Part shown: piece by piece, positions 6,649-10,971 of the stretch | How the letters are laid out: each line of letters opens with the position of its first letter | Numbering within the stretch: position 1 is the stretch's first letter | From: Paraphysomonas bandaiensis | Taxonomy: Eukaryota; Protista; Chrysophyceae | Length of the DNA: 44,034 nt | Reading direction: 5' to 3' | Assembly: GCA_965644295.1 (NCBI GenBank) | Contig: CBFFRP010000008.1 | Span: 1 to 44,034 of the forward strand | Program-made: the position numbers and the translations under genes | The notes under the pieces: model-generated | Database searches by the model: none | What the model was told of the DNA's origin: nothing | The model's input: the letters and a program-made list of their open reading frames with translations, nothing else

Positions 6649-7161
6649 TGCTCGACTTTAGTGAGATGAGCACAAGACGGACACCTAAACATCCATCCAC
6701 ATGAGGGAAATGATACATACATACCCTGCTGTACTGTACATATATCCGTATACAGCACCAGAGTACGGTATATCCCGCCGTTTACCAGTATACCACTGTA
6801 TACTACTGTATACCACTGTTATGGATATTGAGAAGGCAAGTTTTTTTTCTGTAGTCCAGTTTTTTCTAGTAGTATACGCTTACACAGAGCTGCTGTAGCA
6901 GGGTGCACTGCGATGTGAAACGTATGGTATACTCGGTATACTGAGTCGTATACACAGCAGTCTTGTCGTATGACGGCTGTGGTTTCACATTGAGTACGAA
7001 TTGCATGCACTGCTCTGAGACATACATACATATATACAGTATACGGTATGTGGGTGCTGTATATGAACACGTGAGTCGGTGGAGTTACGGTGGACTCAAG
7101 ACAAGGTTACACATATAGACAGCGTCAACTCAAGAGGTCGTTATATGACTATATATGTGAC

Positions 7162-10100
7162 ATGGAGTAATAAAATAGAAATTACAATGAAGTTTGCTGT
7201 ATTGCTTAACTAGCAGTGTGATGCCGTGGTTTGGTGACGTTCACAGAGTAGACACTCGGCGATCTTCTTGCTCCGCGGCGTCGTCGAGGGGGTCGGGCAA
7301 TTCAGTCTCTCTTCCGCAGAGCCAAACCGATGAACTGTTCCATTGGATCAGAACACAAGTTTCTATTTCAGGTCGCGAATCACGACCAGATGATTACTAC
7401 TATAACCCTGATAATCATGAAGGGTGGGTGCAAAAGTACCTGGACTATACCATCCAGGCAAGGGACCTCGTAGAGAACGACAATTTCAACTATTTTATTA
7501 TTATTGTAATCATAATTGCTGGTATTAATATTGGAATACAGAGTTATGATCGAATGAGTAATGTGTTTGCCCTTGACATGCTGGACAATGTTATTTTGAT
7601 AGTTTTTTCTTTTGAGGTTGTAGTCAAAATCTTGGCAGAAGGGTTAGCACCTATGATGTACTTTATTGGCCCTGAATGGAAATGGAATAATTTTGACTTT
7701 GCAATAGTCTTTATGAGTTTACCGTTTTGGGATGGCCTCTTTGGTGGCGGATCGCTGGCACTCTTGCGTTTGGTTCGCCTCATGCGTCTAGCAAAGCTTA
7801 TTAAGAAAGTTCCTCAGCTGCAGATGATAGTACAAGGTTTAACTGGTGGGTTATCATCCATCGGTTATATTCTGCTATTATTGCTTCTGGTGTTTTATCT
7901 CTTTGCGGTTGTTGGATTTTACATGTTCGGGAAAAACGACCCTTTTCACTTCGGTAGTCTCCCATTGGCCATGATGACTCTTTTTCGGTGTTCGACTCTT
8001 GATGCCTGGAGTGATGTCATGTATCTGAATATATTCGGATGTGATGGATACGCGTATTTATATGTTTCTGAGGAAGACCAGGATGAGACCAACGAGCTCT
8101 TTTGGTGCGAAAATCCCAAAGGACAGTTTGTGCTATCTACTGTGTATTTTGTTGTATTTGTGGTTGTGTCTGCTCTGGTAATGCTGTCTCTTTTCATTGG
8201 TGCTGTTACCCTGAGTATGGCAGACAGCCTTAACGAACTCAAGGCTATGGCCGAAGAAAAGAAGAAAGCAGACCGCTTCAGGAGGGGTGTTACGAAAATG
8301 TTTCTGGCCTCCGCACGTATTGAATTGAGGAGTAAGGGAAAATTGGCCAAGAGTAATGGAACCCTGGCTGGGCGAATGATAAACAGAGCAGGAATGAAGC
8401 GTGTCAAGTCACCTGAAGGTGTAGCTGCCTCGCACAAAACCTCCATTGCTAGCGTGGATCACCCAGAGGTTACGGCACTAGTCAAGCGCAGGTCTAATTT
8501 GACGTTAGGCCCAGTGCGGGAAACCGTGCCAAGTGTCAAAAACGACAAGGATGAGGAGGAGCAAACTAATGCTCAAATGAATGCCTTTGAAAATTTTGAG
8601 AGTCGCCAGAAGAAGGCGATAGCAGTGCTAGCCTCTTCATCATTACCTGACCCCACCTCTATGATGCATAGGAAGTTCTCTATGTTCATGCCAGCCGTAC
8701 TGAAGGAGCACCTTGACCATTCCGAGCACGATAAGGTGGTTGGTGAGTCCATAGAGGTCAGTCGTAAGCTACGTATCGCACTCGGTGAACTTCCTATCGG
8801 CATTGAAGATGAACCGAAGACCTTCAAACTACTGTTTTATCGAATAAACGTGGCAAAAACCTGGAAGGAGAAGTTTTTAGTCATAGCCGAGCACCTTAAG
8901 TTCTTGACGGAGCATCCGAAGTTTGTTGGTTTCGTGACCTTTGTCATTGTCTTAGCAGGAGTAAATGTAGGCGCCCAAACCGATCCTAGAATATATGGCA
9001 TCCCAATTATTAATGATATTCTCAATGTTTTAGATATACTGATCCTGGCCGTATTTACAATGGAGTGTGTTTTCAAAATTCTGTCTGAAGGACTTCACCC
9101 ATTCGTATATTTTCACGACAACTGGAATAAGTTTGACTTCATAATCGTGGTGGGCTCGTATATTCCCGGTGCTGGATCAATGCTCACAATTTTGCGGCTT
9201 TTGAGGCTTCTCAGAGTTCTCAAACTCGTCAAGTCACTGCCTCAACTTGCTGTCATTGTTAATGCTTTGATGATGGGTTTAGGGTCAATCGGGTACATTG
9301 GGCTAATTCTGTTCCTATGTTTTTACGTGTTTGCTATTCTTGGAATGATACTCTTCCGAAAGAACGATCCGTTTCACTTTGGTAATTTACACATATCCAT
9401 GTTCACCCTTTTTCGAATGTCTACTCTTGACGACTGGACAGAAATCATGTATGTGAATGTGTATGGGTGCGACAGATACTTCGGTGTGTATGAAGACTTC
9501 CCTGAGATGTGCGATGCTCCTGCTGCCACTGGGCTATTGGCAGCCATATACTTTCACTTATTCATTATTATCGGTGCACAAGTATTGCTGACTCTTTTTA
9601 TTGGTGTTGTTACGACGAGTATGGAGGAGGCTCAGGACCTCAAAGACATAGAACTGAAATTAGAACGGCAACTTAAAAGCCTTAAGAATTCAATGGATTT
9701 ATCTGATGCACAGATGCGTCATTTCAGAGAAGTCTTCGCAATGCTAAATTTGGATGGCGGTGGAAAAATCGATTTGGAAGAACTAAGTCTAGGACTACAG
9801 CCTATCAATGACTTATTGCCTGATGATAAGCTTCGCCAAGAAGTGAAGAAATCGGACCCCAGAGGCGTTGGTATTGACGTAATAACTTTTATTATTATAC
9901 TATGTAATATACCTGCGTGCCGCCACAAGCGACTGCTCCGGAGAACCGTTCGACGATGGCGGGCTAACAAGCATAAGCGCGGAGCATTCTTCAGTAATCA
10001 TGCAAAAGCTGCCCTTCCTGACACCTCAAAGATCAAGAAAAAAATTCTAAAGAATGCGAAGGAGATGAATGATATGATATTTGGCTCTGCTGTTTTATTT

Positions 10101-10451
10101 CCGAGCTCGAGTTCTACTTCGTTTAAAGGAGACGGGCATGTTATTTCTGATGGGGGTGGTAGTAACAAGGAGGCAGGTATGACGGAAACAAGCATCAAGC
10201 GTAGGCGATCAGGAACATGGGTTCCTGAAACAGATCACGAAATCTCCACAGCTCTGTCAGTGGCGAAAGAATATTCTACACTAAGCTATATCTATAATAT
10301 ATCTGGTAGTGCCAGTCCTGTACAGACACCATATGTGTCCAATCGACATTCTAATGTTGGTGGTTTTTTCGTACAGGATATAGCTAGCGATAGTGTGCAA
10401 CCCACAATAGAAGAAAAGTCTGGTACATATGTCATGCCTTTTGATAGTTAA
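7162..10451 (+). CDS. Two-domain (2x6TM) voltage-gated cation channel with C-terminal EF-hand pair
   Basis: Two Ion_trans repeats, each with WNxFDF, an S4 (LRLVRLMRLAKL / LRLLRLLRVLKL) and a pore (FRCSTLDAWSD / FRMSTLDDWTE). EF-hand NLDGGGKIDLEE. Predicted 5-nt first exon 7162-7166 plus 47-bp intron 7167-7213 gives MDSVMPWF; alternative start ATG 7221. Confidence 0.93.
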
Positions 10452-10971
10452 AGTTTTGTGCATTTATGTATGTTTTTATGTAGCCATTGCATCACCTGTA
10501 TTAATCCTAATAGGAATTCGTTGCTAAACCGCACAATGGCAAGAATAATATGGTGCTGACTAGGAATATGTGCTGCTAATATTTTACTAAGTTGTATGAT
10601 ACTCAATCTACGAAAACACGTTGTGATAAAAATAATATTTGAGAAGAGAAAGTGCTTGAATTCGTGTGGTACTTCGAGATATGCCCTACTCCCTCACGTG
10701 CTCACGTGAACATCACAGCCAACAATCAACAAAAATTACTAAACCTTACGACATATTATCATGTACATTAATTAGGTAGAATTGGAATTGGACATTACAC
10801 TGAAGTTAACTTCGCTCTTCACGTAAACCTTAACTTTCTTTGTTGCACACAATGCACTTCAAGTAAGAATTATAATTATTGCTCTAAACTCTAAACACTT
10901 TATAACATACTTAACACTTATGTAACATATGGTGAACATCTGTTCTCAGCAATCTTATTATAATACGTTCA

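What the first reader, a model, noticed from the sequence alone, without database searches (positions are those of the whole stretch)
7162..10451. Two-domain channel made of two near-twin NaChBac/CatSper/EukCat-like repeats with TLDxW filters
Seen: both repeats share F.KNDPFHFG.L...M.TLFR.STLD.W...MY.N..GCD, with filters TLDAWSD (7995-8015) and TLDDWTE (9423-9443) 476 codons apart. Both S4 segments are fully charged, and the EF-hands are C-terminal rather than between domains. Known: canonical TPCs have asymmetric domains with Asn-containing filters, whereas TLDDW-type filters mark Ca2+-selective single-domain channels (CatSper, engineered CavAb). Inference: an independent tandem duplication of a single-domain channel giving a dimeric Ca2+ channel distinct from TPCs, an analogue of the 1-to-2-to-4 domain intermediate.
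Basis: partly seen in the sequence, partly recalled or inferred. Interest (0 to 1): 0.8.

Follow-up and report, generated by a model that had tools for sequence, protein, structure and literature searches.

The report
Two-repeat bacterial-type voltage-gated cation channel
This alga carries an expressed gene for a voltage-gated cation channel made of two bacterial-type six-helix repeats that arose by their own internal duplication, separately from two-pore channels and four-repeat calcium or sodium channels, so it is a second natural example of the one-to-two repeat step in channel evolution.

Summary
One uninterrupted ORF (ATG 7221 to stop 10451, 1076 aa) encodes two Ion_trans repeats that are 44-47% identical. 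The filters TLDAWSD and TLDDWTE sit exactly where stated, both S4 segments carry a full R-R-R-K-K ladder, and an EF-hand pair is C-terminal. A single unspliced RNA contig covers 7129-10496.

The gene belongs to a large conserved family of two-repeat channels. Named members come from MMETSP algae, Triparma, Bolidomonas, a chrysophyte, Phaeomonas and oomycetes.

Domain trees (IQ-TREE, LG+C20) place repeat I and repeat II as reciprocally monophyletic sister clades (100/99). They nest inside single-repeat eukaryote channels, which are sister to bacterial 'ancestor-like' BacNavs (the CavMr/NavPp type). This genome's own TPC-like and four-repeat Cav domains lie far away. Forcing repeat I to join TPC-DI and Cav-DIII is rejected (AU p=0.018). 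The independent-duplication claim is therefore supported, but as one ancient, family-wide event.

- Calcium selectivity cannot be read from the filter. NavPp (TLEDWTD) conducts Na+ and is blocked by Ca2+.
- In this copy the second EF-hand loop is degenerate.

I found no paper describing this class. Dimer assembly and ion selectivity remain untested.

The parts
7129..10524 (+). Transcribed unit (mRNA), unspliced
   Evidence: Contig 1 of run X1 is 3368 nt long and lies on 7129-10496 end to end with no gaps or joints. A contig of polyA metatranscriptome run X9 reaches 10524. No run gives depth in the bins 7000-7123 and 10596-10700.
7221..10451 (+). Coding sequence, 1076 aa plus TAA stop
   Evidence: The first ATG follows an in-frame TGA at 7188. 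The MMETSP transcript protein P0001 has the same length and differs at 3 residues.
7485..8219 (+). Repeat I, S1-S6 (aa 89-333)
   Evidence: Pfam Ion_trans, helices in model m4898c7dfd983 at pLDDT 80-94, motif positions.
7755..7811 (+). Repeat I S4 voltage sensor, R183 R186 R189 K192 K195
   Evidence: Motif position. R, R, R, K are present in 113-114 of 114 family members.
7995..8015 (+). Repeat I selectivity filter TLDAWSD (D261 at the high-field-strength site, A262 next to it)
   Evidence: Position. Family census of repeat I filters: TLEDWTD 19, TLENWGD 18, TLDAWSD 12.
8220..8921 (+). Linker between the repeats (aa 334-567): a long post-S6 helix, then disordered, poorly conserved sequence
   Evidence: pLDDT is below 50 for aa 380-442 and 466-483. 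The family alignment has no consensus here.
8922..9623 (+). Repeat II, S1-S6 (aa 568-801)
   Evidence: Pfam Ion_trans best stretch, model pLDDT 82-94, 45% identity to a bacterial Enhygromyxa channel.
9183..9239 (+). Repeat II S4 voltage sensor, R659 R662 R665 K668 K671
   Evidence: Motif position. R, R, R, K are present in 115-116 of 116 family members.
9423..9443 (+). Repeat II selectivity filter TLDDWTE (D737 at the high-field-strength site, D738 next to it)
   Evidence: Position. Family census of repeat II filters: TLEDWTD 20, TMDGWSD 15, TLDDW.. about 25.
9705..9905 (+). C-terminal EF-hand-like pair (aa 829-895). Loop 1 is NLDGGGKIDLEE (9747-9782). Loop 2 is SDPRGVGIDVIT (9852-9887) and is degenerate.
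   Evidence: Weak Pfam EF-hand hits. The model shows helix-loop-helix twice with a paired beta bridge at pLDDT 81-89.
9912..10004 (+). Basic helix after the EF-hands (CRHKRLLRRTVRRWRANKHKRG), conserved in the close paralogues and in P0002/P0004
   Evidence: Tail alignment and model helix 898-928. The function is not known.
10080..10448 (+). Disordered C-terminal tail (aa 954-1076)
   Evidence: pLDDT is about 30.

Best explanation
The gene encodes a voltage-gated cation channel subunit built from two six-helix repeats of the bacterial 'ancestor-like BacNav' type, followed by a C-terminal EF-hand-like pair.

Shown:
- It is one unspliced, transcribed gene.
- Both repeats keep a complete S4 charge ladder, a T-L-D-x-W pore filter and the family's conserved cysteines.
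- It belongs to a large conserved two-repeat family. In that family, repeat I and repeat II are sister clades that arose by a single tandem duplication of a single-repeat eukaryotic channel, which is itself sister to bacterial CavMr/NavPp-like channels.
- This duplication is separate from the one behind two-pore channels and four-repeat Cav/Nav channels.

Inferred:
- Two subunits assemble into a four-fold pore with repeats I and II alternating, by analogy with TPC dimers.
- That pore would have a ring of four aspartates (D261 twice, D737 twice) plus two extra aspartates (D738).
- Depolarisation opens it and it passes Ca2+, probably together with Na+.
- The C-terminal EF-hand module, which tunes a related single-repeat channel (EhEUKCATB1), is weakened in this copy, because loop 2 is degenerate and loop 1 starts with Asn.
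For: Gene and transcript:
- Continuous ORF and start codon.
- One colinear RNA contig over 7129-10496 and parts in polyA metatranscriptomes.
- A near-identical MMETSP transcript protein.

Architecture:
- Two Ion_trans domains.
- Repeats I and II are 44-47% identical.
- S4 charges are invariant across the family.
- The model has both six-helix repeats at pLDDT 80-94 and an EF-hand pair fold.

Kinship by identity:
- Both repeats are 36-46% identical to bacterial channels from Myxococcota, Enhygromyxa and Meiothermus.
- They are only 25-31% identical to this genome's Cav domains and about 21% to one own TPC-like repeat II (L032).
- They share the NDPxHF and GC[DE]...C motifs with the bacterial group.

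Trees:
- In the 79-row careful tree, repeat I is monophyletic (100/99), and repeats I and II plus gene fragments form a 99/93 clade that excludes bacteria, Cav and TPC.
- In the 97-row careful tree, the two-repeat clade has 100/99 support and splits into a repeat I clade (99/83) and a repeat II clade (100/80). It is nested in single-repeat eukaryote groups, and these are sister to 26 bacterial-type rows. The whole set (97/96) is apart from Cav and TPC domains.
- The AU test rejects repeat I joined with TPC-DI and Cav-DIII (p=0.018).

Functional precedents from papers:
- CavMr and NavPp (PMC7041947).
- OsEUKCATA1, filter TLDAWAD, is non-selective between Na+ and Ca2+ (PMC6509283).
- EhEUKCATB1 has two C-terminal EF-hands, and its currents fall when Ca2+ is removed (bioRxiv 10.1101/2020.04.29.068528).
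Against: - No functional data exist for any member that I could find.
- The dimer was not modelled or tested.
- Ion selectivity in this backbone does not follow simple charge counting. NavPp, with more filter aspartates than CavMr, prefers Na+ (PMC7041947).
- The outgroups were this genome's own Cav and TPC-like genes. The TPC-like identity rests on weak PDB hits to TPC1/TPC2 (E about 1e-6) and on an EF-hand motif between their repeats. No named animal or plant TPC, TPCR, CatSper or EukCatA/B/C sequences were in the trees.
- One metagenomic two-repeat gene (L051) has both halves at the base of the repeat I clade. A strict single-duplication history does not predict this.
- The taxa of most family members, and of the single-repeat sister groups, are unknown.
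Confidence: 0.8

Rival explanations
1. It is a divergent member of the two-pore channel lineage (TPC or the 'TPC-related' TPCR clade with Cav-like filters). Its repeats I and II would then descend from the same duplication as TPC DI and DII.
For: It has the same gross architecture, two six-helix repeats in one chain. TPCRs are described as having acidic, Cav-like filters (PMC4278181, PMC6259924). Older surveys counted 'TPCN homologs' in Phytophthora (PMC4820453), and these may be members of this family.
Against: Repeats I and II are sisters inside a BacNav-like clade, far from this genome's TPC-like DI and DII. The AU test gives p=0.018 against repeat I joined with TPC-DI and Cav-DIII. Identity to an own TPC-like repeat II (L032) is about 21%, against 36-46% to bacterial channels. 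No TPC chain appears among the 60 PDB rows shown of 131-141 significant. There is no Asn filter, and the EF-hands are C-terminal rather than between the repeats (PMC11085791).
Confidence: 0.05
2. It is half of a four-repeat Cav/Nav channel produced by gene fission, working as a heterodimer of two halves, as in the aphid sodium channel.
For: The best full-length PDB and Foldseek matches are Cav and Nav chains. Several paralogues exist in the genome that could pair. An aphid precedent exists (PMC4332693).
Against: Both repeats match the same Cav repeats best, II and IV, rather than I-II or III-IV. Identity to this genome's own Cav domains is only 25-31%. The Cav domains form a separate part of the tree. 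The high Cav/Nav scores come from summing four matched repeats.
Confidence: 0.03
3. The two repeats come from fusion of two different single-repeat genes (for example two separate acquisitions from bacteria), not from a tandem duplication.
For: Repeat II is nearly as similar to bacterial channels (40-46%) as to repeat I (47%). In a first FastTree, repeat I sat apart from repeat II plus the bacteria.
Against: With a site-heterogeneous model and wider sampling, repeats I and II are sister clades with 100/99 support, and two single-repeat eukaryote groups branch between them and the bacteria. The FastTree pattern had low support (32-56) next to a very long outgroup branch.
Confidence: 0.06
4. It is an artefact or a dead gene: two neighbouring single-repeat genes read through, or a pseudogene.
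For: Gene callers often split relatives of this gene into two 'single-domain' proteins.
Against: The frame is open for 1085 codons. One RNA contig spans both repeats. The architecture and functional residues are conserved in over 100 clusters. The split relatives are adjacent halves on one strand, so they are errors in the other direction.
Confidence: 0.02

Closest known systems
Ancestor-like prokaryotic BacNavs (AnclNav): CavMr of Meiothermus ruber and NavPp of Plesiocystis pacifica (Shimomura et al. 2020, PMC7041947)
   Same: They are the closest sequence kin that carry names. Meiothermus, Enhygromyxa and Myxococcota proteins are 36-46% identical to each repeat. The filter type is the same: TLEDWTD is the commonest filter in both repeats of the family and equals NavPp's, and TLEGWVD is CavMr's. 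The NDPxHF and GC[DE]...C motifs are shared. The bacterial-type group is sister to the eukaryote clade.
   Different: The bacterial channels are single six-helix subunits of about 260-320 aa that form homotetramers and have no EF-hands. This protein has two repeats in one chain, a long linker and a C-terminal EF-hand pair, and its two filters differ from each other.
EukCat single-domain channels of algae (EukCatA of diatoms; EukCatB, e.g. EhEUKCATB1)
   Same: They are eukaryotic BacNav-like voltage-gated Na+/Ca2+ channels. OsEUKCATA1's filter TLDAWAD matches repeat I's TLDAW (PMC6509283). EhEUKCATB1 carries two C-terminal EF-hands, as this family does (bioRxiv 10.1101/2020.04.29.068528).
   Different: EukCats are single-repeat. 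The surveys I read list only Cav, TPC and EukCat classes for diatoms (PMC11085791), and one reports EukCat as absent from other stramenopiles (bioRxiv 10.1101/2024.02.19.579948). No EukCat reference sequence was available to place in my trees, so kinship to EukCatA, B or C is untested.
Two-pore channels (TPC1/2/3, plant TPC1, diatom TPC1 and TPCL)
   Same: Two six-helix repeats in one polypeptide. TPCs work as dimers, which is the model for how this protein would form a pore.
   Different: The duplication is a different one. TPC filters contain Asn (VNN, MGN, VND), and plant and diatom TPC1 have EF-hands between the repeats (PMC11085791). Here the filters are acidic T-L-D-x-W, the EF-hands are C-terminal and both S4 segments are fully charged.
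Four-repeat Cav/Nav channels
   Same: The repeat fold is the same, and these are the best hits by summed score in PDB sequence and fold searches. The filter ring is acidic, as in Cav.
   Different: Two repeats rather than four. Domain identity is only 25-31% and the tree position is separate.

Membership tests
Two-pore channels (TPC/TPCL) | Two six-helix Ion_trans repeats in one chain | tested here: met
   Pfam finds two Ion_trans stretches. The model shows two six-helix repeats.
Two-pore channels (TPC/TPCL) | Repeat I and repeat II descend from TPC DI and DII (domain phylogeny) | tested here: not met
   Repeats I and II are sisters in a BacNav-like clade apart from this genome's TPC-like DI and DII. 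AU p=0.018 against repeat I joined with TPC-DI and Cav-DIII. Caveat: only own-genome TPC-like genes served as references.
Two-pore channels (TPC/TPCL) | Asn-containing filter in repeat II (VNN, MGN or VND) | tested here: not met
   The repeat II filter is TLDDWTE. TPC motifs are taken from PMC11085791.
Two-pore channels (TPC/TPCL) | EF-hand pair between the repeats (plant and diatom TPC1) | tested here: not met
   The EF-hand pair is at aa 829-895, after repeat II. The linker between the repeats is disordered.
TPC-related channels (TPCR, Rahman et al. 2014) | Membership of the TPCR clade (Salpingoeca, Monosiga, Capsaspora, Thecamonas sequences) | not testable with these tools
   The paper is not held and no TPCR sequence was obtainable. 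Only second-hand descriptions were read (PMC4278181, PMC8490419).
BacNav / AnclNav | Pore signature T-L-[ED]-x-W with the flanking NDPxHF and GC[DE]...C motifs, and high sequence similarity | tested here: met
BacNav / AnclNav | Single six-helix subunit that forms homotetramers | tested here: not met
   Two repeats lie in one ORF and on one RNA contig.
EukCat (A/B/C) | Single-repeat eukaryotic BacNav-like channel | tested here: not met
   The protein has two repeats.
EukCat (A/B/C) | Grouping with EukCatA, B or C reference sequences | not tested
   No reference sequence was at hand. The own-genome single-repeat genes I first took for EukCatA are K+ channels with TTxGYGD. No single-repeat BacNav-like gene was recognised in this genome.
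Four-repeat Cav/Nav | Four repeats in one chain, or a half that pairs I-II with III-IV | tested here: not met
   Contig C8 has only two repeats. Both repeats best match Cav/Nav repeats II or IV. The tree position is separate.
CatSper | Sequence kinship to CatSper1-4 pore subunits | tested here: inconclusive
   No CatSper chain appears among the 60 PDB rows shown of 131-141 significant for the whole protein or either repeat. No phylogeny was made.
EF-hand Ca2+ sensor module | Canonical 12-residue loops (Asp at position 1, Glu at position 12) | tested here: inconclusive
   Loop 1, NLDGGGKIDLEE, has Asn at position 1 where at least 90% of relatives have Asp, and keeps Glu at position 12. Loop 2, DPRGVG-IDVIT, is one residue short and lacks Glu at position 12. 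The loops are canonical in Triparma, oomycetes and the C52 paralogue. The fold is kept in the model. Pfam hits are below the cut-off.

The most novel reading that the evidence does not exclude
The family is an undescribed class of voltage-gated channel: a dimeric, pseudo-tetrameric BacNav-type Ca2+/Na+ channel that repeated the one-to-two repeat step independently of TPC and Cav. It is widespread in stramenopiles, including diatoms and plant-pathogenic oomycetes, and expanded to about ten loci in this genome. It may supply depolarisation-activated Ca2+ entry alongside, or in place of, four-repeat Cav channels.
Probability: 0.45. Interest if true: 0.72.

Novelty: new variant of a known kind. 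Interest (0 to 1): 0.6.

Why it matters
Four-repeat calcium and sodium channels are thought to have come from a single-repeat channel through a two-repeat stage, and until now TPCs were the only living two-repeat example.

This family gives a second, independent two-repeat lineage. Its single-repeat relatives, both bacterial and eukaryotic, are still close in sequence (about 45% identity). That makes direct experiments possible on what concatenation buys: asymmetric filters, two different voltage sensors and fixed subunit order. The comparators (CavMr, NavPp) are already tractable.

It also fills a gap in algal and oomycete Ca2+-signalling inventories, which list only Cav, TPC and EukCat classes. 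And it warns that many 'single-domain' database entries are halves of these genes.

Tried and rejected
1. I took three own-genome single-repeat genes (L048-L050) for EukCatA. They carry TTVGYGD/TTLGYGD and are K+ channels. They were dropped from the later trees.

2. Short hits with EF-hands looked like single-repeat ancestors. P0130 clusters at 90% identity with a 903-aa member, and P0244/P0224, P0132, P0128 and P0173 lie directly beside a second Ion_trans ORF on the same strand. They are therefore halves of two-repeat genes, and I withdrew the idea of a living single-repeat EF-hand form inside the clade.

3. Scans of this genome with PF00520 and with a bacterial channel found no recognisable EukCatA.

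4. A first FastTree put repeat I apart from repeat II with weak support. I did not rely on it, because a very long TPC branch sat next to it.

5. Rahman et al. 2014 (TPCR) is not held.

6. Two cluster look-ups gave almost no taxon names.

7. Foldseek against the PDB returned only four-repeat Cav/Nav chains at TM about 0.2-0.4. This cannot separate the hypotheses.

8. Complex prediction was not run. A full dimer (2152 residues) exceeds its limit, and a pass for cut-out repeats against unrelated controls would not have changed my odds.

9. The exhaustive protein search was not used, because the claim does not rest on absence of relatives.

10. The search of earlier findings returned three notes on other parts of the window, none bearing on this gene.
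Full report
**Observation.** The window (contig C8 of a 62.5-Mb genome) carries one long open frame, 7194..10451 on the + strand. An in-frame TGA lies at 7188 and the first ATG is at 7221, so the protein has 1076 residues.
- Pfam finds two Ion_trans domains (1.4e-80) and weak EF-hand hits after the second one.
- The two repeats align at 44% identity over 290 residues, E 5e-64.
- Both S4 segments carry R-R-R-K-K at every third position.
- There is no third repeat. Upstream lies a PP2C gene on the other strand, downstream an ankyrin-repeat ORF, and C8 has only these two Ion_trans hits.

**Expression.** One contig of run X1 is 3368 nt long and lies on 7129-10496 from its first to its last base, without gap or joint. 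PolyA metatranscriptomes hold parts of the gene at 99% identity or more. No run covers the flanks. A protein from an MMETSP transcript is the same length and differs at three residues. So both repeats sit on a single unspliced RNA contig that stops at the gene's ends, which fits one mRNA. The runs are kept as contigs, and the tool warns that these cannot fix mRNA ends or prove transcription.

**Family.** The word search returned 267 proteins, and the best 120 all score below 1e-160. Most are 800-1300 residues long with two Ion_trans domains, usually with EF-hand domains.
- Named members come from Triparma, Bolidomonas, a chrysophyte, Phaeomonas, Pythium, Phytophthora, Plasmopara and Nothophytophthora.
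- Source names are generic ('voltage-gated sodium channel', 'EF-hand domain-containing protein').
- The genome itself holds close paralogues on C108 and C9 (73-77% identical per repeat), a second subfamily on C52 and C297, and further multi-exon copies on C445, C398, C238, C67, C598, C74 and C376.
- It also has silicon-transporter genes, so it is a silicifying stramenopile, most likely a diatom.

**What the repeats are like.**
- Searched alone, repeat II finds bacterial single-repeat channels at 40-46% identity: a Myxococcota MAG, Enhygromyxa salina and Meiothermus. The Enhygromyxa protein matches repeat II at 45% and repeat I at 43% in this genome.
- Identity to this genome's four-repeat Cav domains is 25-31%, and to one own TPC-like repeat II (L032) about 21%.
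- Both repeats best match repeats II or IV of solved Cav/Nav chains. No TPC chain is among the 60 rows shown.
- The bacterial relatives carry TLEDWTD or TLEGWVD filters and share the NDPxHF and GC[DE]...C motifs.
- These are the filters of NavPp and CavMr, the 'ancestor-like' BacNavs of Shimomura et al. (PMC7041947). TLEDWTD is also the commonest filter in both repeats of the family.

**Phylogeny, first tree.** I cut all repeats out with a profile and built trees with IQ-TREE under LG+C20. The first careful tree had 79 rows and 284 columns.
- Repeat I is monophyletic (100/99).
- Repeat I, repeat II and short 'single' hits form a clade (99/93) that excludes the bacterial channels, the genome's Cav repeats and its TPC-like repeats.
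- TPC-like DI joins Cav DIII (90/86), as the literature describes for true TPCs.
- Forcing the family's repeat I to join TPC-DI and Cav-DIII costs 56 log-likelihood units, AU p=0.018.

**The 'single' hits.** These turned out to be halves of two-repeat genes. P0130 clusters with a 903-aa member. P0244, P0132, P0128 and P0173 lie next to a second Ion_trans ORF on the same strand. One relative, P0176, stands alone on a 30-kb contig and is followed by a C2-domain ORF. Its kin are single-repeat proteins with a C2 domain and TGEDWT[DE] filters.

**Phylogeny, second tree.** The second careful tree had 97 rows, with the fragments removed and more bacterial-type and single-repeat sequences added. It is clean.
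- A BacNav-like super-clade (97/96) stands apart from Cav and TPC domains.
- Inside it, 26 bacterial-type rows are sister to a eukaryote clade (97/90).
- Inside that, two single-repeat groups branch first (each 100/99).
- Then comes the two-repeat clade (100/99), which splits into a repeat I clade (99/83) and a repeat II clade (100/80).

This is the pattern of one tandem duplication. Because oomycete and algal members sit in both daughter clades, the duplication predates their split.

One exception remains. Both halves of a metagenomic gene (L051, whose cluster includes a Picozoa-labelled entry) sit at the base of the repeat I clade. I cannot tell whether this reflects conversion within the gene, a second duplication or an artefact.

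**Conservation and structure.**
- In an alignment of 35 full-length members, the S4 arginines and lysine, the S2 Glu/Lys, the S3 Asn/Asp and the filter Trp are invariant or nearly so in both repeats.
- Across 114 and 116 members, R, R, R, K are (near-)invariant in each S4.
- Identity between repeats I and II within a protein ranges from 0.33 to 0.49 (median 0.41; window 0.47).
- The AlphaFold model has mean pLDDT 69.5. The two six-helix repeats are at 80-94, an EF-hand pair fold at aa 829-895 is at 81-89, and the linker and tail are disordered.
- Foldseek returns Cav and Nav chains, which is consistent but not discriminating.

**EF-hands.** Relatives from Triparma, Bolidomonas, oomycetes, Phaeomonas and the C52 paralogue have canonical loops (DLDGGGTIEEEE and DEDNSGEIDLAE types). 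In the window protein, loop 1 is NLDGGGKIDLEE, with Asn at position 1. Loop 2 is DPRGVG-IDVIT, which is one residue short and has no Glu at position 12. The close paralogues and P0002/P0004 share this degenerate loop 2 and also a basic helix that follows it. Ca2+ sensing by this copy is therefore doubtful.

**Mechanism.** Shown: an expressed two-repeat subunit with two intact voltage-sensor signatures and two different acidic filters.

Inferred:
- A dimer forms a four-fold pore with repeats I and II alternating, as in TPCs.
- Four aspartates (D261, D737) lie at the high-field-strength site and two (D738) at the next position.
- Depolarisation opens it.

Permeation cannot be read from the filter:
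- NaChBac turned to TLDDWAD becomes Ca2+-permeable, and OsEUKCATA1 (TLDAWAD) passes Na+ and Ca2+ (PMC6509283).
- The 'beacon' aspartate rule would predict Ca2+ selectivity (PMC10120453).
- Yet NavPp, the closest characterised backbone, has TLEDWTD and prefers Na+ with Ca2+ block. It gains Ca2+ selectivity only with Gly at position 4 (PMC7041947).

My best guess is a Ca2+-permeable, weakly selective cation channel.

**Comparison with the literature.**
- Diatom TPC1 and TPCL have VNN and VND filters, and TPC1 has EF-hands between the repeats (PMC11085791), so this is neither.
- That survey and a brown-alga survey list only Cav, TPC and EukCat classes (PMC11085791; bioRxiv 10.1101/2024.02.19.579948).
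- An oomycete review counts 'VGCC', 'TPCN' and 'CatSper' homologues by BLAST (PMC4820453), and some of these may be members of this family.
- EhEUKCATB1 is a single-repeat channel with two C-terminal EF-hands and filter TGESWSE (bioRxiv 10.1101/2020.04.29.068528). It is the nearest described architecture.
- Searches for two-domain or two-repeat BacNav/EukCat-like channels found nothing.
- TPCR, a TPC clade with Cav-like filters in choanoflagellates and relatives (PMC4278181, PMC8490419), could not be tested, because neither the paper nor any sequence was available.

**Verdict.** The independent-duplication reading is well supported, with three qualifications: it is an ancient, family-wide event; calcium selectivity and dimer formation are untested; and the EF-hand module is degenerate in this copy. 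I rate it a new variant of a known kind, the bacterial-type voltage-gated cation channel, and of moderate to high interest for channel evolution and for algal and oomycete signalling.

Noticed in passing
L057:5001-7027 (P0176) and proteins P0257, P0259, P0262, P0263, P0270: This is a family of single-repeat BacNav-like channels fused to, or followed by, a C2 domain, with filter TGEDWT[DE]. In the tree it is the closest single-repeat group to the two-repeat clade. I know of no description of an Ion_trans plus C2 channel.
   Followed up: partly
L051:86-2468: A marine-metagenome two-repeat gene whose cluster includes a Picozoa-labelled entry. Both halves branch at the base of the repeat I clade and are 51% identical to each other. 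This hints at conversion within the gene or a separate duplication.
   Followed up: partly
Proteins P0130, P0132, P0128, P0173, P0224/P0244; loci L051, L054, L055, L058: Many database 'single-domain' channel proteins with EF-hands are halves of two-repeat genes that gene callers split at introns or frame breaks. Counts of single-repeat channels taken from such data will be inflated.
   Followed up: yes
G000: C108:226272-228560, C9:89516-91768, C52:37424-39195, C297:689584-691371, C445:161350-164514, C398:105488-106057, C238:53518-54899, C67:133065-134373, C598:50726-52038, C74:139348-140750, C376:119686-120404: The genome holds roughly ten loci of this channel family. Some are intronless like the window gene and others are multi-exon. 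Some may be allelic contigs.
   Followed up: partly
window:5890-6522 (-): A PP2C phosphatase exon (Pfam PP2C, 1.9e-42) lies about 700 bp upstream of the channel gene and is transcribed divergently from it. Its other exons were not traced.
   Followed up: no
window:1-4000: This stretch is GC-rich (0.46-0.56, against about 0.41 elsewhere) with strong G-over-C skew (0.32-0.37). Overlapping minus-strand ORFs there have no Pfam match.
   Followed up: no
window:13534-14700 (+): An ankyrin-repeat protein of 388 aa built from a regular PPCPW-containing repeat (Ank_4, 4e-24).
   Followed up: no
L061 (G000:C324:99500-104500), L031-L036: These are this genome's own TPC-like genes. They have an EF-hand motif right after repeat I and, in L061, a repeat II filter AMLGNW, which is closer to plant MGN than to the VNN reported for diatom TPC1.
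   Followed up: no
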